From positions 1-64,000 of the forward strand of contig DF237087.1 of the NCBI GenBank assembly GCA_000708835.1: a stretch of DNA of 64,000 bases, in the 5' to 3' direction. A program made the position numbers and the translations under genes. Of this stretch, positions 48,901-60,304 are shown in pieces. Source of the stretch: Klebsormidium nitens (taxonomy: Eukaryota > Plantae > Klebsormidiophyceae). How positions within the stretch are numbered: position 1 is the stretch's first letter; each line of letters begins with the position of its first letter. Under the pieces are notes generated by a model. It was not told the origin of the DNA, made no database searches, and worked only from the letters and a program-made list of their open reading frames with translations.

Positions 48901-49418
48901 GCCCGAGTTGCTTTACGAGTCTGTGACTCCATCAAGGAAAGCACTTTGGTTGAGACAGTCAGAACGTGAGAGTATCTCGCTGAAGTGCAAGAGAGCGCCC
49001 GGCGACGATGAAGCCTTCCTCGACTCGCAGCCTGTACTTGATGTTTGCCGTTTTTTCGTTCATGTCTCTCACCATCAACCAATATTTCCACGATCTTCAC
49101 AACTCTCCTAGAGGTCCTTCGTCGATCAACACCTTTTTGCTTCACAAAGCCTGCCAACGAGCAGTCACCTTCTCTTGATTGCTAATCTTAGACAAGTACA
49201 GACGTGAAGTAAACGACGACTGTGTGCATCCGCCTAGTTCGAAAATGGACCGGACGCCGTTAATCTGGTGATCCTGCTCCTTCTCCTGATGTCTCTTTCC
49301 TGAGGTTAACGCAATACGGACGGTGCGTGCAGGCGTCCGCATGGTCCCCGTGAGCTGGGAGAAAATGCAGTGCCCAAAAACGAAGGTGATCGAGCTGCGG
49401 AAAGTCGCCAAGACATGA
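45913..49418 (+). CDS. CSL4: Exosome complex component CSL4 (EXOSC1)
   Basis: Exons 45913-46077, 47029-47103, 47751-47839, 48168-48252, 48551-48632, 49333-49418 in phase (193 aa). S1-domain QQDVRATEIDKV, SFRPGDIVRAEVLSLGD, YYLSTAKNELGVV and C-terminal MVPVSWEKMQCP...ELRKVAK. Confidence 0.95.
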
Positions 49419-50626
49419 CGAACAGGTGGTGGCAAGTGGCACGACGCTCCGAGCGGAGAGGCACTGCCACGGCACAGCCGGAAACAGTAAGATAAAGCAA
49501 AAGGACCCGCGTTTTTGAGGTCCCAACTTGCTTCACAAGGAGAGCCGCTCGAGCTCACGCCTGTGTAGCCGCGGCGCTTGAATGTTCGCTCACGAAGCTC
49601 AAGTGCTGGTCACTGTGTTTGACCAGCTAAATTTTGTCCAAAGATACGTACATTCAGGACTCGTGCTTTTGAGCTTCTGATATCGACCATTCGCTGTGTG
49701 TTCTTTATTTGCATCATGTATGCAACTAAAATCACATGATGTTCGGTGAAAGCCCACATGCGGGTGCGGTAGACTGTAGGGAGCCGGGGCCAAGCTGGAA
49801 ATTGCTGACCGTTGAACGAAGTTTCGAAACTTGCCATATGTGGCTTTAATGTATACCACATTCGCTTTATGACCTAATCGTAGCGGCAAGTTTTTATTGG
49901 CGGTCAGAATAGTGCTGGATGTGCGTCGGGCCATGACGGCCAGCTTGCACTAGTGCTTAAGGCCCTTATTTAGTTGATAGAATCTCTGGCATACAGTCGA
50001 TCCGAGCATGCACTCGTGTTGAAACAGATGCGCAGCATTTGCATAGTTCGACATCTCCAACCCTTGGTCACGATCATGCTGCCTCATACAATGATTAAAT
50101 TCTGCGGAATCGAGTCCTTGGTAACTCGAAGCATTGCAACTGGACCATTCATTCAGCAAGACATTGCCACGAGTTGGCCCGTGGAGAGCAATAACACTTT
50201 GAAGCGGAGCTCCAGGGCAGATGACCACAATTTTTGTGTGGGCATGCTGATTCACCCGCTGCCTTTTCTCAACCTGACAGATGGATGATACTCAGTGACC
50301 ACCTTGCAGGCTAATCTACGTAAGTCTACCAGAAAATGTTTCCGCTTTACAATGTACAATAGTATTGCTCCTTTGATTAACCAGATGAGCAGTCTGGTTC
50401 GACTTTGTCAACCGACTTGCTCACCTAGGAGTGTGAAACACTCCGGCCAAGGGATGGACTGCAGGCATGTATAGACACAATGTTCAAATTTGGTTCCTTC
50501 CAATCTGTCCCGTAAAGATGAGTCCGAGTACCTAGCCTCTTAGAGGTCGACGGCTTCACGTGTCATCCCAAGCATCTACAAGCACGGAAGAGCTACCTAT
50601 GAATCTGCAGCGGGGCAGCTCATGTC

Positions 50627-50775
50627 CCGTCGTCATCTGAGCAAAGCAATGTAGCGGATGAGGATACTAGCCACGCCTTGCTCAAATGTCTCAACGTCAA
50701 GCTTGCGTTTACTTCTGGCCCCAGAATTCAAGTACCGTCGTCATCTGAGCCAAGCGATATAGCGGATGAGGATAC
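50627..50775. repeat. Two 41-bp direct repeats, each able to fold as a hairpin
   Basis: Copies at 50627-50667 and 50735-50775 differ at 3 positions. Confidence 0.9.
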
Positions 50776-52785
50776 GAACAAAACCATTGATCAAACGTGA
50801 GAGATGACACTCATTACTAAAAGCTACTCCTGCTTAGATGCTCTGGGACTCGACATGACATTGGCGACCGAGAAACCGCCAAGTGAGGAACTTCTGGCAG
50901 CCAGTGAAGAGAAGAGGTAAAAGAAACCCACAGCAACAGTTGATTGGAATCTCCATTACATGAACAATCAAACAGTCATTCAGTTGGAAAGCCAAACCGC
51001 GTTTGCACCAGGGCAGCTGAAATGGGTTAGCGCTGCTGAAGAAGGCAGAAGAAGGCAGCTTAGGGAACGTGGATCAAGTCAGATCCCAAACCCGCTCACC
51101 TTGTTGCAAAGCTGTATGCTCGCCCTCCACTCCCAGCATCGACACTAACCGAGAAGCCGCCACGATCGCATATCGCGGGTACAATGAGCGGGTTGCACAA
51201 GGTTTTCGCGACGCACTGCAGACGTAAGAGCTGACTGAATATGTCTCAAATCTTACAATGACCTGCAAGGGATTCCATTGACCTTGTTCCACGCTTTTGG
51301 CAGTGGAATAAAAGAGCAGAAGGTACTCTTGATTTAGCTATCTCTATGTCTGGCAAAGTCTTGCAGATATGTGCGCTCTAGGTCAAGTCTGAATGAAAGA
51401 GCATTGACCTGCGTTTCCACAGAAAAGCTCCTTCCTGTGACTGGATGTGCTGCCACTGGTCACCATGAAGCCATAAAGGGTACACAATGCTGTCAACTGA
51501 CACCATTGGCAAAGCGGCAAGGAGGTGCAAAGTCAGAAACTTCCAGCAGGCCTTAAGGCAGTCAGACAGGAATATTCTGTGCAAGGTCATCCGAACAGAT
51601 CTAAGTTGGTAATGGTGGTGCAAATCAGACGGGCCAGAGCATAGTCCACATGATGTCAAGAGTGCCTTGACCACTTCCCCATCACAGCGCCAAGCGCGCT
51701 TCATGACAAAACTGTGGCTTGAATCGTACCTCGCAAAACTATGGTGCATGCTGCCTTCGCTCTCAAACAAGCTCGCCCTCGGAACCCGCCCAGAACTTCC
51801 TACATTCGCAGGCGCCCCACGCCTTGCTGTACCTTTACAGCTTGTGCTACTTGCACTCTCTGCTACATTTCCCATGCCGGTACTTCCTGCCCTTCTCCCC
51901 GCGGTCTGTGCTGCCCCACCGAAGGACTTGGCAAACTGCTGAAAGCGAGACGCAGCCCGAAATCCTGCGCCGCTTGCCATAACACCCTGCTATGCAAGTC
52001 ACCAAAGGCACCCGCGCATATTCCAAGTGCTATCTAGAGCCAATTGAAGCAACTGCTGGCACTCCTCACGAGCACCACCCACTACACACCTTTTGAGGCC
52101 TGCTGAACCGCCAAATCGCTACGCAGGGCAAGACAATGGATTGACCCCCAACCTGGCTGTGATCGACCTTCCTCCTCAAGCTTTTCGAAGCGAGACAGCG
52201 CGGATGATTTGGCAGAATCTAGACTTTTCAAAACCTCGCACAGAAGCTTGAGCAGGCTTTGCGGGTTTGCCCTCCTTGAACGTGCTGGCCGCGGCCCCCT
52301 CGTCTCCTTCCTCCCTTCAAACAAACCGCCCGAAGAACACGGAACGCTTGCGGTCCTTCTCCTCCGATGCCACTGATATCAGATCCTGACCGTAAGATAA
52401 ACTTATCAGCAGTTTTGAATCGTCCGATGAACGCCAACCGCCCCGTCGCATTCACCCCTGCCCTTCTGTTCATTCTTCGCAGAGAGTGCTTTTGAGGGAG
52501 GACGGCAAGAGAAAGAGGGAGCCATTCTCGGCTTGGAAGGGCGTTCTTGAGCTGCTTCTTCCCCCAGGCAGCTGCTGATTGAGCTTCTGAGCTGGTGCCT
52601 TCTCGTTCTTTGGTCAGAGCTCGATTTGCACTTCGTCTCCTGCGCACGTCTGAAGCACAGGCACTCTGCCTCATTTCTTGCCTGCGAGAGCACCCTTTGA
52701 GGCCGAAGACAAGTCTCCATTGTCAAGCTCGTTGCTGTCAAAAGTCGAGTCCCTCAGATTCTGGAGAGACCTACCAATCTGAAGG

Positions 52786-55700
52786 ATGGCGCAGCCAACT
52801 CCTTACTCGTACTTCCGGCCTCCTGTGCCTGTGGACCCTGCAAATGGCCAGAAGGGCCCAGTGTTGACCCCAATGTTTGACACACTAGGCATTCCGCTTG
52901 CACCTGTTCCCACTGGACGGATACAGTTTGAGCCCCCCAACTATGGACCTGGTAAGCTAGTCTCGCGGTTTTCTGTAACTTGGTTAAGATGGCTGCAGGG
53001 GGTTGGGAGTCTGTGCAGTGGACAGGAAAGAGTAGATGGATAGCCTCCGCTTGCATCCCTTTGCAAATGTGCTTTTTGATGATCGTATACAGCTTATGTA
53101 ATGCAAGTAGAAGTTCAGCGGAGTAAAGTTTACACTTAGATGTTTCTCAGCTAGTAGAGGGACTGCCCCAATCTGCGCATATTTCCTGCTCATATTCTGC
53201 ACAGATGCATTGGCTCAGACTTGATCATTCAAAGTTGCTGGGGAAAGACTGTTCTGATCTCTCGGGAGCTGATGGAGCGAACACATATTGACCTTAAATG
53301 GCCCAAGTATCCATGGGCTGACTAACCGCCGAATTTCAAGGGAAAAAGTACACAGATACTTAACACTGTGTCTGCAGACGTGACAGTGGTTCCGCTTGCC
53401 CCTGCCCTTGAGAACCCCCTGCTACGGCTGCCCCCCATGGGGGCCCAGGCATCATATATTGCTTCCCCCCCAAGGGGAAAGAGAGGAGAGGTACGCGGAG
53501 AAGATTCAATATTGTGGATAAGCCTGGTCTCTACTTAGTAACATCTGAATGCCGCATCAGTGCCTTTTTGCTTATTGATGTGACAAACATCATGAATCTT
53601 CTTTATGCATGCTTTTCAACGTTGAACTAGCTTTTCTTTCCTCTTCGGCCTTGGAACACAAACGGGCTTCTGAAGGTTTGCTTGTGCAGTGTGCTTGTGC
53701 TGCGAGATTCTTGAGATGGTATGTATAAAACCTGAAAGCTGTACGCTTGGCAGCTTTGTAGTTCATCTGGTCCCTTCATAGATGCACCATTTGGCAGCTT
53801 TGAAATTCATCTGGTCACTTCATTGATGCACCATGGAACTTGTGTCAATCATGAAGCAGAGGATGATGCAAAAGAAGGCAGATCTAACTAAGCAGAGTTA
53901 ACTGGAAGTTGTTGTACTTAAGCGAAGTTTATAATGATTCCTTTGCTGAAGTACAGTATCTGCGAATCCAATTCATTCCAGTCAGATTTTCAATGTCTTT
54001 TAGCTTGCAGAGATGGATGATGAGGCAGTATGGAAGTGTGGCCTCACCCGCAACTTTCTCGGCTTTAACCCCAACCCCAGCCAGATCCTTAACTCCTTAG
54101 CAAGCCTCTATACTGGACTGAAAGTAACCCTCTAACCCGTTCGTTCATATTAATGTATGGTTGGGAGATGTTTCACAAGGGTGGTCGACCAACACTTGTC
54201 ACTGCTGTTGACCCCTTGTCAGGACAAGGAGTCGATTAAGGTCTCAGAAACATCAGAAAGAGTGCTTTTTGGCCGCCGCAGGTTGTCCGGCCGCCAGAGG
54301 ACCGAGAGGAGCGGCAGGCTTATGAGGAAAAGAAGAAGTTTGCCATCTCGCTGATCAAGCGGTTGCCAATGGACACGCGCAAGCTGATCTGTGTGGCAGA
54401 GTACTTTAAGCACATGGAACAGGGGAAGCTCAGGAAGCCAGAGGCGTTCAAGTGAGCGAAGTTCTCGTAGTTGCCTGTTTGACCGTTTCTTCTAAGCTTG
54501 ATAAGTCGAGCTAGGGTCAAAAGAGCGAGCAGTCATCAGGTTGATAATCTTCTGTGATTGTAATCTGCTCTGGATCAACCCAGTCACTTTATCACATTCC
54601 TCAAACGCAGCCTCCTAAAACCACACTCAAACATCCGTCGGAGGTCGACCATGCTTTCGCCGTTCTTCTCAGAGGACTCCGAAATGTCTCTATAAAGTAG
54701 ATGACCAGTGGTGGCAGCGATCTCGTACCATCACAGAGTATTGTTCTCTTTCCGGCCGAGTATTCCTCTAGTTGCAGACAACTATGTTCACCGGGTTTTA
54801 GTCCGACTTCTTCTTCACAAACGGTATCTATCTAACGCAACCGTTGGTCTGCTGCACAGACTTTTACAATGTTTCGGTGGTGGAATCTCGTGTGACGGGA
54901 CGTGTTTGCTGACTAGATTGTATTACAAGCAAGAGTCCTTGAATCATTGGATAAAAATGTTGTTGCCATGCTTAATTTCGTTTACACTTTCACCTTCCTG
55001 TTTTCGTTCCTTTTCTCTCGTCCGTTCTTTTTGCTCTGCTCGTATGCTCCCGTCCCCCTCAGCCGTATCGTCTTCGTTCTCCTTCCTCCGGTCGATCCCC
55101 ATACCCACACTGAAGCCGATTCCAATTCTCACGTTTGAAGTGTTCTTAACTCTCTGCAGGGCGGCTGGCGAGTCCGCAGGCACCAGTGCAAAGTCCGCGA
55201 TGAACTGGGTGGAGGACTTCACGGCGCGTGGCGACGGGACCTTCTCCGAGTCCAAGCGCGGGAAGCACGCCAAGAGCCCGTGGCTGCTGCAGGCGCCACA
55301 CCTGCAGGCGCGCGCACAGCAGTGGCTCAAAGAGCAGACGGCGCCAGAAAGGGTCCCCCAGAAAAACGGCTCCCTGTCCAGGTAAGCAAACAGGGGAGGT
55401 CATGACTCGGTCCCCAGAAGCAGCCATTGTTGGATAGTCGAGGAGAGATCTGGCTGTGTTGATGGACGATAGAAGCGGTTTGGCCAGACCGTTTGTGCAG
55501 CTGATGCTTTCCTGGCGTGACAACTGTTGCCTTCGAGTAGCTCGCAGCGAGTCCACCAGAAGGATCCCGGGCGCTTGCTGCTCACCAATCAAAGCCAGCT
55601 CGTTCTGATGCTTCCGCTTACTATCGAGCTCATTGGCTGCTTATAGTATCTCTAACGGCGGATTTTCAAGCACAACTTTCTCTTTAACTAGGTTGTCGAG

Positions 55701-56206
55701 CTGTCGACGGGCCAACACTGCTGCTCTTCTCTAGCAGCTTCTAGCTTGCTCACGTTGCCGCTAGTCGTACAGCAGCAGGTGGCAGATTGACTGCTCTTCT
55801 GGAGTGGTTCGGTATAGCTCGGGGATCAGTGCCAGAGACACTTAGATGCTCACTCCGCTTGATGTGTTTGTGCAGAGCCTTCCAAGAGTACTGCAACAAC
55901 GAGCTCCTGATTGACGCGGAGGTCCCAAAACCAAAGAAACGGAAAACCGACGCAACCGAGGCTGTCGACGAAGAAGCGCCCCCTGATGCTTCTGGAGCGC
56001 GAAGGATCTCGCAAAAGACCGCGCGAGCATGGTTACACAAGCTTGGATATGATAGCAAGCACAAGGCCATGGCCGGGGACGTAGACAATGAGCTAGATGT
56101 GACCGTTATTGCGGGGCGCTTGCCGGGCGTGGATGATGGCCGGGATCCTGAGGATTTGCCCATCGTGCAGCCCAACCAGTCGCTGCAAGAACAATTACGG
56201 TCGTAG
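52786..56206 (+). CDS. Spliced gene resembling the N-terminal (HTH) region of a Tc1/mariner-like transposase, lacking the DDE domain; link of the first two exons unresolved
   Basis: Exons 54011-54123, 54282-54451, 55160-55381, 55876-56206 join in phase. Exons 52786-52951 and 53378-53490 join each other but need one more phase-shifting exon to link downstream. Motifs WVEDF...ESKRGKH, FQEYCNNELL, RISQKTARAWLHKLGY and NLS-like PKPKKRK. Confidence 0.6.
53747..53834. repeat. 44-bp imperfect tandem duplication (intronic)
   Basis: TTGGCAGCTTTG...GATGCACCAT at 53747-53790 and 53791-53834, few mismatches. Confidence 0.9.
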
Positions 56207-57041
56207 GGTCGTCCCTTGAAACTCAGATTTTATGTGGGGTTCATGTGTACATAGCGTTCGTGTATGGATTCCGTCTGCCCTGTCAGATTGGACGCTCGAA
56301 CTTCGGATCATGGGTTTTCCATTAAGTTCGATCGCGATCGACGTAACTAGGAAGGCAGCATGCCAATCACAACTGCATAGTCGCATGGCTACGGATATCC
56401 AGTACGTACGAGCCTAATGAAGCGTTGTTGGATCGTCGAATCTTTGGCTGCGGCCATATATACAGTATGCATTCACGATCGACGGGCACATGTATATGAA
56501 AGGGTCTGCAGCAGGTATCGCATGAGCAGCTGCATGCATGCTTGCCAGATTGCTAAATGCACACTGAACTTGCGGACCGCCAATAATCACGTACGTCACG
56601 AGGCGGCCGCTCACCTGCATTCACAATCTAGCACTTACCTGAGATCGCAATTTCCGCGTTCAAACCACAATCTGTATGGAGCGGCAGCTAAGTCGAACAA
56701 GTCGTTGATGACCCATCATAGTCCGCGCAAGGCCTGTCTGGTCTTGCAGTCTGCAGCGACTGGTGTTCACAATGAAAACGAGTCTCCCGCAGCAAACTTT
56801 TTCGACCAGACAACTTGTTCTCAGGCAGAAAAAGCCGCAATGCCGCCAAGTGCTTGATCCTGCTCACCTGGCCCCCTTACTCAGGACGGCAGAGAGAGGA
56901 CTGCTGTCAGTGCCAAATTCACAATCTGCGCTGCTCTTTGTATGTACATGCCTAGATATCGATACAGACTGCTTGCCTAGAGCTAAGGTGTGCGGTCGAC
57001 TAAGGGAAGAAAAAAAGACGGGATACCAATAATATCAGAAG

Positions 57042-59911
57042 CTATGTACCAGCGGCATCGCTTTTTGTCCGTTTGAAAACGTTTTTCCGATAGTACTTCA
57101 ACTCCTCTATACTTTCCCTGATGTCCGCAAGAGCTCTGTGCTCTTGCTTTTTCACGGGTGCTCGCTCCGCATCTGCACGAACCAGAAAGGTGCATTATCT
57201 CACTGCGCATCCTGCCAAATCTGTCCGAAGTACCTGGGACCATCACAAGCAGCGAAACAACAAAAAGCAAACCGGATCACACTTAGTGAAAGCTTCTCTT
57301 GGAGATAACGACCACTACGGCCGCCTTAAGTATCTGTTTTTCCTGCTCTCGGATAAAGCTTTCGACCATTTGGGACAGGCAATCAGCTACCGACGACACA
57401 AGAAGCAGCAAAGTAGGCTGGGCGTCGAAGCTGGGCAGCAGAGCTTCCGCAGTCCGCAGAGAAAGGAGCCATAGCCGCGGTTCGTAACGGGGTTCCAACT
57501 CACTGGGTTCTGAAGACGAGGCTCACCTTTCGGATACCATCGCCGAGCCAACGACCTCAACGTACTCACGTCCACCAACACGTGTGAGAAGTGTGCCGCC
57601 AGCTTGGGCATATACCGCTGTGCCAGAACGGAGTAATGAATGTTAACTGCCGGAACTAAACAATCTGGTCACAACCGACTGCCAACTCCTGACTCTCTAA
57701 CTAGTCTACACGCCAGTGACTTCGATTCTGAAGCTAGTGGTACCACTTGGAAACTCATGGGGGGATCTTCGTCAGGTTGAGGCTCAAAGCAATTTGAAGA
57801 AATTTTTCCTTCCAAATGACGTGTGCTCAGTTGCATGGTTTTCACCGTTCATTTTCGCAGGGAAAGAGCACATTCCAGGACTGGGTGTCGTCGGCAGGAG
57901 TATACCTTCAAGAACGCCAAGTCCGCATGGATCGAGTTCCCCGCTAGCTGCGCCGCTCCGGGCGTTGTATGCTCTTGCACAAACACCAACACCTGCATGG
58001 AAGCGACATGGGAACTTATGATAAAAGACCCCAGATTCGAAATCCAAGTTGTTTGAGACTTTTTTACTGCCAGCTTCGAGGGTCATCCTTCAGGTCAAGT
58101 CAAGAACGTTTTAGTGGAGTTTCAACATTCGAAGGACATCCCTCAGGAAACTGATTCCTAGATCTATGGATTCATACGATCACCCAAATTCACGTCTGCC
58201 AAGTTGGTGCACTTGGCTTTCAGCAAAGGGCGTTCAGCTTCGCCGATAGTCCTTCTATCTTGGATTGGCCATTGCCAGGATACCAATCAACGAAACCGAT
58301 CGACAGTTTACAGGCCTGTTTGACCTGCGACTACGAGTTGGGACTTAGCCAGTAGTCCGGAAGGACGGCAAGTGTACCGAAAATTGGTCCGGATAATGCT
58401 CCAAGAAGTGGTGATTACTGAACCAGGGGTTTGATTCAAATGATGATCTAAGAACAACTAATAACTCAAGCTCCGATCAGCTATACTTTCAACAAGACGT
58501 CTTGGCTGGTCCTCGAAACAAACCTGCACCTACCTTTTCCTCCGCCTCTTCGATAGACACTGTGCTACTCCGAACCCTCTCCGTCAGCCCTGCACAAACA
58601 CAGCTGCGTCTGCTTAAACTGCTGTTATGCATCCTTTTGAGAAGGGCACCAAACATCGGGATAAGCTTTGTGCGGCAGATGCCTCATTCTCTCAGTAAGT
58701 ATGGGGCATTCTTCGGCTCACTCTGCTCTTAAGCTAAATTCTAGTCCTTTAATCCTCTTAGGTGAGCAGAAGAGATTTATCATCACTGGGTTCAAATGGG
58801 TTTTCAGTCAGCACAAGAGAATTACTGCCTGCGACTTTCGTGAGCTACACGGATTCGTGAACGCCTGATGATGGTTGTAGACAAAGATCTTCGATGGTCA
58901 AACAGATTTTTCTTCAAGCGTTTTAAAGCAAACTGCGGCCCTGTCAAACAGGCAAGTTGGTCTTGTCGCAGAAAGGAACACTCCAGAAAGTCATGGGCAT
59001 TGTCAGTTGGTGTCCAGGAGAATCGGATTCCGCGTGAATGTTTCAATAATGTAGATGGTCATTTCTTATTCAAACCTGTTTGGAAACCCTCCTCAACCTA
59101 ACCAACTCAGGGGGTGCATACCGCTCTTTCCATGGTGCTCCTTGCACCAGTCGTTCATGCAGTCTAGTGCTGCCTCAGGGGCGTGGATGACAAGGTCCGG
59201 ACCCTCGATCTGCTTTTCTAGGTTTCCGTCCGTGACGATGCAGGCAACCTCGATGATCTGGTCCTTTTCCACCTCCAAGCCTGGCTCAAAGAAAATGTTA
59301 GTTCCTTCTCAAATTGTAAGTCAAAATTTAAAGTCGAGGTTCTTCTTCGCTGGGTTTCCAAAGGCTGTAAATCCAGAGTATCGAAAGATAGCCGTTTAAT
59401 GGCAATACATCGACTTCCAGAGTCGTCTTGGCGTATGTGCACGGGCAGATGGTGGTGCGATCAAAGATTTAATGATACACGCTTCCTTCTTTAGATGCAA
59501 AGCTGCGAATGTCATGATCTTCCTTCTCGTTTTGACAGCTTTAAAACCTGAACAGCAGTCAGGGCAAAGATCCCTAATGAATGAAGAGAGCGAACGCCAC
59601 CACCTGCAAGCGAGACCCAACTGTCTGCATTCAGAAAAGTAGATATTGTTGACATCAATGGTGGTGCACCTCTTGATTTCACAGTTTCACTCACCCGTCA
59701 TCTCAAGGTCAAGCCACACAAGGGGCAACTTCAGCCTCGTTTTCCTCAAACCATTCTGGTCCTGCTCCTTCTTCTCCCCTGTTTTAAACCCTTTCCCTGA
59801 CTGGTTGCCCCCCGTTGCCTTCTTTGCATCATGAGCCGCCAACTCTGCGGCCTCCTCCTCTGGCTGCTCCAGATTCAGAGCACTGAATAGGTTGCGGAAC
59901 GACAAGCTCAT
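57042..59911 (-). CDS. ORN: Oligoribonuclease (ORN/REXO2, DEDDh exonuclease)
   Basis: Exons 59911-59695, 59280-59122, 58589-58534, 57992-57906, 57617-57527, 57172-57042 in phase (246 aa). Exo[24 protein letters not shown], Exo[20 protein letters not shown], Exo[14 protein letters not shown]. Confidence 0.96.
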
Positions 59912-60304
59912 CTTGAACACGAAAGCCGAATCATGAGCGTTTCGTGCTAGAGGGTTTGGATATGTGAAAGATCATACCAAGCGAGTGAGGATTTTGACAA
60001 CACCGCACTTGCGAGCTTCTGGCAAGTCCTTCAATTGGCGGTGGTGCAAAAGTAATTGACAGAGTTGAAGCACGGCCGCTCGTGGAAAACGCATTGACTG
60101 CAGCACAACGGGCACAATCTTGACGATTTCACCTCCTCCGCTAAAGATCATTTGAAGCGGGGGCCACAGCGTCCTAAGATCTTATGTGGCTTTGCCTAGC
60201 TGCCTCCAATGCCTCGGGGAAGTTGCGTGCCCGTTGCATTCAAATTCCAGAAGTTGGTTGCAACCTCTTGCATGCAACTTGGAAATGGGAATGGGGGCCC
60301 GGGC

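What the first reader, a model, noticed from the sequence alone, without database searches (positions are those of the whole stretch)
52786..56206. Intron-containing, catalytically truncated transposase-derived gene: candidate domesticated DNA-binding protein
Seen: phase-consistent canonical exons encode ...RKLICVAEYFKHMEQGKLRKPEAFKAAGESAGTSAKSAMNWVEDFTARGDGTFSESKRGKHAKSPWLLQ...ARAQQWLKEQ...RAFQEYCNNELL...PKPKKRK...RISQKTARAWLHKLGY, then an unrelated acidic tail and a stop at 56206. Recalled knowledge: this motif order (W..DF...G...ES.RGKH; F.EY.N.ELL; IS..TAR.WLHKLG) matches the N-terminal HTH region of a Tc1/mariner-like transposase family common in fungal genomes, where a DGHER motif and the DDE domain follow. 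Both are absent here and I found no TIRs. Inference: exaptation as a nuclear DNA-binding regulator with gained introns and a new Pro-rich N-terminus.
Basis: partly seen in the sequence, partly recalled or inferred. Interest (0 to 1): 0.75.

Follow-up and report, generated by a model that had tools for sequence, protein, structure and literature searches.

The report
Old plant gene from transposase DNA-binding part
This alga's five-exon gene is a spliced, selectively maintained host gene that keeps only the DNA-gripping front end of a Tc1/mariner-type jumping-gene enzyme. Close relatives cut off at the same point occur in peat moss and spikemoss, so the capture is probably ancient and, as far as I could find, undescribed.

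Summary
Window 52786-56206 (+) is a five-exon GT-AG gene. It equals Klebsormidium nitens KFL_001380100 (GAQ83168.1, 333 aa, "hypothetical protein"). A K. subtile transcript (94% identical) confirms all four junctions.

- **Transposase origin:** residues ~100-285 match, at library-wide significance, the N-terminal region of proteins that continue through a DGHER motif into a DDE_3 domain. A model of one such relative matches the whole Mos1 mariner transposase (Foldseek E 2e-7).
- **What is missing:** the alga's protein ends about 50 residues after WLHKLGY. It has no DDE domain, no terminal inverted repeats and no other copy in the window.
- **Selection:** two further Klebsormidium-like genomic copies keep all exons, intron positions and the acidic tail, while introns are unalignable. 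A hand count gives dN/dS of about 0.1.

New here: the nearest relatives are equally truncated genes in Sphagnum and Selaginella (38-41% identity to the alga's, 62% to each other). Those two share three intron positions, so the gene dates at least to early land plants. Klebsormidium shares none of these introns, so one origin for alga and plants is likely but unproven.

DNA binding and nuclear regulation are inferred only. I found no paper on the family.

The parts
52786..52951 (+). Exon 1 (residues 1-55 plus the first base of codon 56); start of the Pro-rich N-terminal region
   Evidence: ATG at 52786 and donor G|GTAAGC. 100% identical to P0002. The motif F/DxLGIPLAPVPxGRIQFEPP is conserved in K. 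subtile and in L005.
53378..53490 (+). Exon 2 (residues 56-93); rest of the Pro-rich region, ending in the basic patch PPRGKRGE
   Evidence: Acceptor CTGCAG| and donor GAG|GTACGC. The same exon with the same end point is present in L005 and L006.
54282..54451 (+). Exon 3 (residues 94-149 plus two bases of K150); long helix 101-119 and the first helices of HTH subdomain 1 (LPMDTRKLICVAEYFKHM...)
   Evidence: AF2 pLDDT is above 90 from about residue 100. About 82% nucleotide identity to L005, mostly third-position changes, while the flanking introns are unalignable.
55160..55381 (+). Exon 4 (residues 151-223). It holds the recognition-type helices of HTH subdomain 1 (to about residue 173, position 55229), the linker GDGTFSESKRGKHAKSPWLLQ (55230-55295), and the first helix of subdomain 2.
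   Evidence: This is the most conserved stretch in all relatives (W166, G184, H186 and K188 are nearly invariant). In the first 60 codons against L005 there are 24 synonymous-only differences and 3 replacements (hand count).
55876..56047 (+). Exon 5, first part (residues 225-281): FQEYCNNELL helix, variable loop, and the last helix RISQKTARAWLHKLGY of HTH subdomain 2
   Evidence: helices 222-234 and 270-279. Aligns with the HTH_33-type end of transposase relatives, just before their KKGxYxDGHER motif.
55925..55945 (+). PKPKKRK (residues 241-247), a candidate nuclear localisation signal in the loop of subdomain 2
   Evidence: Read from the sequence. A basic patch is kept in L005 (PKAKKKK) and L006 (PKSKKRK). 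The NLS function is inferred from its likeness to the SV40 type (own knowledge).
56048..56206 (+). Acidic C-terminal tail (residues 282-333) and stop codon; it replaces the DGHER linker and DDE domain of the transposases
   Evidence: The tail and the stop position are conserved in K. subtile, L006 and L005, which differ only by in-frame indels. It has low pLDDT. There is no DDE-like ORF downstream, and the next gene (RNase_T, minus strand) starts 836 bp away.

Best explanation
The locus is a domesticated (exapted) host gene, K. nitens KFL_001380100. It derives from the N-terminal DNA-binding region of a transposase of the IS630/Tc1/mariner (Pfam DDE_3) superfamily. The donor branch has a KKGxYxDGHER linker and an unusually long spacer of about 120 residues between the second D and the E.

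The protein keeps a leading helix and two helix-turn-helix-like subdomains (residues ~100-285). It has lost everything from the DGHER linker onwards. In exchange it has a Pro-rich N-terminus, a basic NLS-like loop and a conserved acidic tail.

Shown: gene structure, splicing, homology to the transposases, absence of the catalytic domain and of terminal repeats, purifying selection within the Klebsormidium lineage, and equally truncated intron-bearing relatives in Sphagnum and Selaginella.

Inferred: the protein enters the nucleus and binds specific DNA through the paired-like HTH module. Its targets may include sequences descended from the ancestral element's ends. It would then recruit other factors through the acidic tail or the N-terminal motif, acting as a transcriptional or chromatin regulator. 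A KP-type role, blocking transposase binding sites of related elements, is a sub-alternative.
For: - **Gene and transcript:**
- **Homology:** phmmer of P0001 against 1.84 billion representatives gave 45 hits at E<=1e-3. These include proteins with DGHER plus the start of a DDE domain (P0013 6e-9, P0019 5e-8, P0020 6e-8) and full-length ones (P0027 3e-6, P0041/P0043/P0045 about 5e-4).
- **Pfam on the 40 aligned sequences (P0002, P0001 and 38 hits):** HTH_23 in 10, HTH_29 in 8 and DDE_3 in 3, with the DDE_3 hits always C-terminal.
- **Catalytic motifs:** HDES, FDNAPSH and SPIE are visible in the alignment.
- **Fold of a full-length relative:** the AF2 model of P0045 matches full-length Mos1 at E 2e-7, Sleeping Beauty at 2e-4 and SETMAR at 4e-3.
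- **Fold of the alga's protein:** the AF2 model of P0002 has pLDDT above 90 over about 100-240 and 265-285, as two helical subdomains.
- **Selection:** K. subtile shows 0 of 20 amino-acid differences within residues 96-214. L005 and L006 keep all exons, all intron positions, an intact ORF and the tail, while introns and the 3' flank do not align. The hand count for exons 3+4 against L005 is about 49 synonymous-only codons versus 19 with replacements, so dN/dS is roughly 0.1.
- **Not a TE copy:** no TIRs, no copy elsewhere in the window, ordinary neighbours EXOSC1, RNase_T and UGT80, and no annotated close paralogue.
- **Land-plant relatives:** Selaginella P0004/P0048 and Sphagnum P0007/P0049/P0062 end 15-35 residues after WLHRLGF and share three phase-0 intron positions. 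They sit among ordinary genes, and in Selaginella the next gene is 170 bp downstream. A further plant-type copy is L007.
- **Similarity hierarchy:** 247 bits for moss-lycophyte, 129-148 bits for alga-plant, and 59-69 bits for either against the TE-like P0013.
Against: - The K. nitens protein itself has no Pfam hit, whether searched exon by exon or via P0001.
- Its model has no significant Foldseek match. The VIA-align matches to transposase DNA-binding domains (TnpE Z 6.5, TnsB/MuA Z 5.1-5.2, Mos1 Z 4.1) lie within the noise range for helical proteins.
- The DDE_3 hits of the relatives are all below Pfam's curated cut-off.
- No intron position is shared between Klebsormidium and land plants, and the distribution is patchy.
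- Genome-wide copy number in K. nitens could not be measured.
- Synteny among Klebsormidium-like contigs was inconclusive.
- DNA binding, localisation and function are untested.
- dN/dS is a hand count, not a model fit, because the scripting machine was lost.
Confidence: 0.8

Rival explanations
1. Two independent domestications. Klebsormidium and land plants each truncated a related transposase at about the same point, so the alga's gene is not an orthologue of the Sphagnum/Selaginella gene.
For: None of the alga's four intron positions coincides with the three conserved land-plant positions. CK|V(T/S)EAY against EAFK^AAGES differ by 17 nt and in phase. QQ|GKH is absent in the alga. DVQ| against SLSR^AFQEY differ by about 16 codons. 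The N-termini and tails are not alignable with confidence. No orthologue was seen in other streptophytes in the exhaustive representative search.
Against: The alga's protein scores 129-148 bits against the plant proteins but no more than 69 bits against any TE-like relative, and no TE relative is closer to either group. Many residues are shared by the truncated proteins only: LPxxTRKLxCVxE, AGESxGxS, WVED, LLQxxHLQ, CNNxLL and RxISxxTARxWLHxLG. All of them end just before the DGHER linker. Independent intron gain in an initially intronless captured gene would explain the intron pattern equally well.
Confidence: 0.2
2. An ordinary defective or non-autonomous transposon remnant that gene predictors happened to splice into an ORF, with no host function.
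For: Homology to transposases. UniRef's automatic name for one Sphagnum member is 'Transposase'. The genome carries Tc1/mariner-type elements according to earlier scan notes (unchecked).
Against: A spliced complete ORF is present in a K. subtile transcriptome. Four Klebsormidium-lineage copies keep the ORF, splice sites and stop while their introns have diverged beyond alignment, and synonymous changes greatly exceed replacements. There are no TIRs and no copies in the window. The moss and lycophyte copies are 62% identical and share introns.
Confidence: 0.03
3. Reverse direction: an old streptophyte DNA-binding gene was the source, and a Tc1/mariner-type element later captured its HTH module.
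For: Direction of transfer was not tested with a rooted tree.
Against: The N-terminal HTH region plus DDE architecture of relative P0045 aligns as a whole to Mos1 (about 400 columns). That is the ancestral layout of the superfamily (own knowledge). DDE-bearing relatives occur in very diverse, mostly non-plant sources, such as the rotosphaerid Pompholyxophrys and many metagenomes. The truncated form was found only in streptophytes.
Confidence: 0.04
4. The protein is a host-encoded transposition repressor of the KP type. A DNA-binding-only transposase fragment would occupy the terminal repeats of still-active related elements, rather than regulate genes.
For: The architecture (DNA-binding domain only, catalytic part removed) is that of known truncated-transposase repressors (own knowledge).
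Against: Retention for hundreds of millions of years in lineages where no close DDE-bearing relative was detected argues for a role independent of one TE family. The conserved acidic tail and N-terminal motif suggest partner recruitment.
Confidence: 0.15

Closest known systems
IS630/Tc1/mariner-superfamily transposases (Pfam DDE_3 PF13358 with HTH_23/HTH_29/HTH_33 N-termini; solved examples Mos1, Sleeping Beauty)
   Same: Residues ~100-285 are homologous to the N-terminal DNA-binding region of DGHER/DDE_3-bearing proteins. The predicted fold is two helical HTH-like subdomains joined by a linker, as in Mos1 residues 5-117. A full-length relative models as a Mos1-like transposase.
   Different: No catalytic DDE domain, no DGHER linker, no terminal inverted repeats, no multi-copy signal. 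It has four spliceosomal introns, a Pro-rich N-terminus and an acidic tail. The donor branch itself is atypical, with about 120 residues between the second D and the E in P0045, against 34 in Tc1 or mariner.
Animal host genes built from Tc1/mariner or pogo transposase DNA-binding domains (SETMAR, KRABINER and other host-transposase fusions; CENP-B/Tigger-derived genes; the Pax paired domain as a proposed ancient case)
   Same: The same kind of event: the transposase's sequence-specific HTH module is retained under selection as a cellular DNA-binding protein. PMC8616336 describes SETMAR, KRABINER and tetrapod fusions.
   Different: Those are animal genes. SETMAR and KRABINER keep the whole transposase fused to a host domain. 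Here only the DNA-binding region is kept, with no recognisable host domain, and the lineage is streptophyte. There is no Pfam hit to CENP-B_N, HTH_Tnp_Tc5 or PAX.
Plant domesticated transposases (FHY3/FAR1 and MUSTANG from Mutator-like elements, DAYSLEEPER from hAT, ALP1 and HDP1/2 from PIF/Harbinger)
   Same: Transposase-derived, intron-bearing, conserved, non-mobile nuclear genes in the plant lineage (own knowledge; review PMC8616336).
   Different: A different superfamily. The review I read lists Tc1/mariner domestications only in animals, and my searches found no plant case. This family is absent from the seed-plant proteins in the searched database.
Selaginella moellendorffii XP_002962332.1 / EFJ36408.1; Sphagnum magellanicum KAH9549368.1 and congeners; K. 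subtile EP00243_P002516 (all 'hypothetical protein')
   Same: The same truncated architecture and collinear core, with 38-41% (plants) and 94% (K. subtile) identity.
   Different: The plant genes have other intron positions, His/Gln/acidic-rich N-termini, a KRGRQ basic patch and a short NFKDxR tail instead of the long acidic tail.

Membership tests
Tc1/mariner/IS630 (DDE_3) autonomous transposon | N-terminal bipartite HTH DNA-binding region homologous to that of family members | tested here: met
   phmmer E 6e-9 to 6e-4 (library-wide) to DGHER/DDE-bearing proteins over residues ~100-285. Alignments. Two-subdomain helical model.
Tc1/mariner/IS630 (DDE_3) autonomous transposon | RNase-H-fold catalytic domain with a DDE/DDD triad | tested here: not met
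   The protein ends 52 residues after WLHKLGY. There is no DDE_3 hit, no similar ORF downstream, and the next gene is 836 bp away.
Tc1/mariner/IS630 (DDE_3) autonomous transposon | Terminal inverted repeats (and a TA target duplication) flanking the coding region | tested here: not met
   Only 15-24 nt, 75-94% chance-level inverted matches in 49000-60000.
Tc1/mariner/IS630 (DDE_3) autonomous transposon | Multiple dispersed copies in the genome | not testable with these tools
   No collection here holds the K. nitens assembly for tblastn. There is no copy in the window, no close paralogue among annotated proteins, and scan notes are blank by sequence (not informative).
Domesticated (exapted) transposase-derived host gene | Orthologues kept in related species with the same gene structure | tested here: met
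   K. subtile transcript. L005 has all 5 exons and L006 has exons 2-5, with identical intron positions. Sphagnum and Selaginella share 3 intron positions.
Domesticated (exapted) transposase-derived host gene | Purifying selection on the coding sequence | tested here: met
   Exons are 80-85% identical while introns and the 3' flank are unalignable. The hand count is about 49 synonymous-only against 19 replacement codons in exons 3+4. There are 0 of 20 K. subtile differences in residues 96-214. No formal codon-model fit was made.
Domesticated (exapted) transposase-derived host gene | Expression as a spliced mRNA | tested here: met
   The complete spliced ORF is assembled in the K. subtile transcriptome (EukProt EP00243). 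K. nitens RNA itself was not examined.
Domesticated (exapted) transposase-derived host gene | Conserved chromosomal position (synteny) | tested here: inconclusive
   The flank alignment against L005 shows no conserved blocks. Pfam scans of flank ORFs of L005 and L006 were uninformative.
Domesticated (exapted) transposase-derived host gene | Demonstrated cellular function | not testable with these tools
   Needs experiments such as DAP-seq, localisation and mutants.
Pfam HTH_23 / HTH_29 / HTH_33 domains | Score at or above the family's gathering threshold | tested here: not met
   No Pfam hit for the exon translations or for P0001, and none at E<=0.01 for P0002. Relatives hit these families at E 1e-5 to 1e-3.

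The most novel reading that the evidence does not exclude
A single capture of a Tc1/mariner-superfamily transposase DNA-binding module took place before Klebsormidiophyceae and land plants diverged. It created a streptophyte-wide DNA-binding regulator that survives today only in scattered lineages (Klebsormidium, Sphagnum, lycophytes). This would be the first ancient Tc1/mariner-derived host gene family reported for the plant lineage.
Probability: 0.5. Interest if true: 0.65.

Novelty: new member of a known kind. Interest (0 to 1): 0.55.

Why it matters
Transposase DNA-binding domains are a recurrent source of transcription factors. The plant examples known to me come from Mutator, hAT and Harbinger elements; the well-known Tc1/mariner cases are in animals.

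This gene family is annotated everywhere as "hypothetical protein". It looks like a Tc1/mariner-type case that dates at least to the moss-lycophyte ancestor and probably to a common ancestor with Klebsormidium.

It offers a compact test case of about 190 residues for two questions: how a transposase's DNA-binding module is rewired into a host factor, and why such a gene is kept in a few early-diverging lineages and lost in most others.

Tried and rejected
- **Pfam** on each exon translation and on the full-length database protein found nothing usable. The only hit was a spurious Peptidase_M24_C at E 0.13.
- **PDB sequence searches**, single and profile, found nothing.
- **Rfam** on the window found nothing.
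- **Foldseek** of the K. nitens model against PDB found nothing significant. VIA-align gave only noise-level matches to transposase HTH domains.
- **Profile search with alignment A4** in the 5.8-billion-protein index was swamped by low-complexity words and missed even Selaginella, so it was discarded.
- **Core-region search of P0002** returned only its own cluster.
- **Synteny tests** with L005 and L006 were inconclusive.
- **Literature search for 'DGHER'** returned only noise. Searches for gene identifiers and for 'domesticated transposase' with Klebsormidium returned nothing.
- **The scripting machine was lost.** No tree, no formal dN/dS and no further tblastn could be run. Codon counts were done by hand from alignments A6 and A7.
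- **I did not join the exons into one typed or built protein.** Exon translations were searched by reference. Full-length searches used the database records P0001 and P0002 that the tools returned.
- **Rejected readings:** pseudogene or TE remnant (conserved ORF and splicing); a CENP-B/pogo- or Pax-family member (no family hit).
Full report
**1. The observation**

The + strand of 52786-56206 carries five exons: 52786-52951, 53378-53490, 54282-54451, 55160-55381 and 55876-56206. All introns are GT-AG with good donor contexts (GTAAGC, GTACGC, GTGAGC, GTAAGC), and the phases are consistent.

A search with the stop-free ORF that contains exon 4 (scored on the exon part only) returned one protein of 333 aa, exactly the length the model predicts.

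- It is a complete ORF from a Klebsormidium subtile transcriptome (EukProt EP00243).
- It clusters with GAQ83168.1, "hypothetical protein KFL_001380100" of Klebsormidium nitens.
- Every exon translation is 100% identical to GAQ83168.1.
- The K. subtile transcript reads across all four predicted junctions.

The window is positions 1-64000 of K. nitens scaffold DF237087.1. The gene is already annotated, without a function.

**2. Is it transposase-derived?**

Pfam finds nothing in the exon translations or in P0001. I then ran an exhaustive phmmer search of the K. subtile protein against 1.84 billion representatives. It gave 45 hits at E<=1e-3.

- **Catalytic motifs.** The longer hits run on through KKGxYxDGHERxDVVxxR into a region with HDES, FD(N/H/Q)xxxH and P.LNPIE..W motifs.
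- **Pfam on the aligned sequences.** Ten of the 40 hit HTH_23, eight HTH_29, and three hit DDE_3 at E<=0.01; a fourth (P0043) hits at E 0.027. The DDE_3 hits are always C-terminal but always below the curated cut-off.
- **Fold of a full-length relative.** An AlphaFold model of P0045 (583 aa) best matches full-length Mos1 mariner transposase (Foldseek E 2e-7, about 400 columns). The next matches are the Sleeping Beauty and SETMAR catalytic domains.
- **Spacer.** Reading the motifs in P0045 gives D260, D348 and E469. That is about 120 residues between the second D and the E, an atypically long spacer for this superfamily.

The homology of the alga's residues ~100-285 to the N-terminal DNA-binding region of a Tc1/mariner-superfamily transposase is thus established by sequence. 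The transposase identity of the relatives is supported by motifs, by repeated weak Pfam hits and by fold.

The alga's own model has pLDDT above 90 for about residues 100-240 and 265-285. It consists of a long helix, a three-helix subdomain (123-173), the conserved linker GDGTFSESKRGKHAKSPWLLQ, and a second helical subdomain (196-279). The N-terminus and the tail are not confidently folded. Structural matches to TnpE, TnsB/MuA, IstA and Mos1 DNA-binding domains exist, but their Z scores (4-6.5) are uninformative for helical proteins.

**3. What is missing**

- The protein stops 52 residues after WLHKLGY.
- The DGHER linker and the DDE domain are absent.
- The 836 bp before the next gene (an RNase_T gene on the other strand) hold nothing similar.
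- No credible inverted repeats flank the locus.
- The window holds no second copy.
- No close paralogue exists among annotated proteins.
- The neighbours are ordinary genes: EXOSC1/Csl4, RNase_T and UGT80.

Genome-wide copy number could not be measured with these tools.

**4. Selection**

K. subtile differs at 20 of 333 residues, and none of the differences lies in residues 96-214.

Two genomic contigs from other Klebsormidium-like algae carry the gene. These are L005 (a JGI metagenome) and L006 (an ENA assembly). L005 has all five exons and L006 has exons 2-5. Intron positions are the same, the reading frames are intact, and the stop codon is in about the same place.

In DNA alignments the exons are 80-85% identical, while the introns and the 3' flank are essentially unalignable.

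My hand count for exons 3 and 4 against L005 covers 129 codons. About 49 codons have synonymous changes only, and 19 have replacements. Most replacements lie in the linker at the exon ends. This corresponds to a dN/dS of roughly 0.1.

The acidic tail and an N-terminal motif (GIPLAPVPxGRIQFEPP) are also kept, and indels in the tail are in frame. This is the pattern of a functional host gene, not of a decaying element.

**5.

The best full-length hits are all "hypothetical protein" or unnamed:

- Selaginella moellendorffii: EFJ36408.1 (317 aa) and XP_002962332.1 (326 aa);
- Sphagnum magellanicum KAH9549368.1 (388 aa), with near-identical proteins in S. compactum and S. troendelagicum.

They align collinearly with the alga's core and end 15-35 residues after WLHRLGF, so they are truncated at the same place.

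I read their gene structures from the genomic loci. Selaginella has three introns (CK|VTEAY, SESQQ|GKH, DVQ|AGD). Sphagnum has these same three (PCK|VSEAY, SDSQQ|GKH, NVQ|PKP) plus one more in the N-terminal region. All the shared ones are phase 0.

A third plant-type copy lies on an SRA-derived contig of unknown organism (L007). It has the same three positions and ends LGFHNFKDFRGPSVKNQA.

The Selaginella gene lies among ordinary genes, with the next gene 170 bp downstream. It is present in two near-identical blocks on one scaffold.

Moss and lycophyte proteins are 62% identical over 190 residues. Shared introns and this level of identity place the truncated gene at least in the common ancestor of mosses and lycophytes, meaning early land plants.

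**6. Alga versus plants**

BLASTP scores follow the species tree:

| Comparison | Score |
|---|---|
| Selaginella - Sphagnum | 247 bits |
| K. nitens - Selaginella | 148 bits |
| K. nitens - Sphagnum | 129 bits |
| Either group - best TE-like relative (P0013) | 59-69 bits |

Many residues are shared by the truncated proteins only. This favours one capture before Klebsormidiophyceae and land plants diverged.

Against that, none of the alga's intron positions matches a plant one. In addition, no orthologue appeared from other streptophyte algae, liverworts, other mosses, ferns or seed plants in the exhaustive search.

Independent intron gain in an initially intronless captured gene, followed by many losses, would explain this. 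So would two parallel captures. I put about 0.2 on the latter. A proper tree could not be built because the scripting machine was lost.

**7. Mechanism (inferred)**

A paired-like double-HTH module taken from a transposase is a sequence-specific DNA-binding device (own knowledge). The Klebsormidium proteins add three things: a basic PKPKKRK loop that resembles a classical NLS, a conserved acidic tail of the kind found in activation domains, and a conserved Pro-rich N-terminal motif.

The most likely reading is a nuclear DNA-binding regulator. It would recognise a motif, possibly one descended from the donor element's ends, and recruit partners through its tails. A KP-type role as a blocker of related transposases is possible. 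It fits less well with long retention in genomes where no close DDE-bearing relative was detected.

**8. Comparison with what is known, and novelty**

The kind of event is well known. SETMAR, KRABINER and many host-transposase fusions from Tc1/mariner occur in animals (PMC8616336). FHY3/FAR1, MUSTANG, DAYSLEEPER and ALP1 come from other superfamilies in plants (own knowledge).

I found no paper on this gene, its identifiers or a Tc1/mariner-derived host gene in the plant lineage. I therefore class it as a new member of a known kind. The scan's notes held nothing on it.

Earlier notes naming the genome as K. nitens agree with what I verified.

Noticed in passing
L006:1547-2152 (intron 3 and exon 4 of the Klebsormidium-like orthologue): The intron upstream of exon 4 holds a decayed second copy of the exon's start (..IPRAAGESADTRT..), about 55 codons before the real acceptor (..LRAAGESAGTSAKS..). 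This resembles the 'splice-junction echoes' another reader noted for the UGT80 gene at the end of this window. No such echo is seen in the K. nitens intron.
   Followed up: no
window 53747-53834: A 44-nt tandem duplication (91% identical) inside intron 2 of the gene (family D2).
   Followed up: no
P0045 and relatives (metagenomic proteins): The DDE-bearing relatives form a Tc1/mariner-superfamily branch with a KKGxYxDGHERxDVV linker and about 120 residues between the second D and the E. Some are 850-1260 aa with long coiled N-terminal extensions. I could not place them in a named family.
   Followed up: partly
L001 and L002 (Selaginella scaffold GL377567.1, near 268 kb and 2.17 Mb): The Selaginella gene and its neighbours (thaumatin, X8, E1_dh, bHLH_IRO3, Myb) occur twice in near-identical blocks on the same scaffold. 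This may be retained haplotypes or a segmental duplication.
   Followed up: no
window 50620-50775: Two 48-nt direct repeats (90% identical), 108 nt apart, upstream of the gene and near the 127-aa unknown gene on the minus strand (family D1).
   Followed up: no
P0014, P0048 and P0007, N-terminal to the HTH region: Basic KRGR-type patches precede the HTH module: RKRGRPRGP in the TE-like P0014, KKRGRQKGPGKPK in Selaginella and RKRGGGGRQ in Sphagnum. They are AT-hook-like. The K. nitens counterpart is the weaker PPRGKRGE.
   Followed up: no
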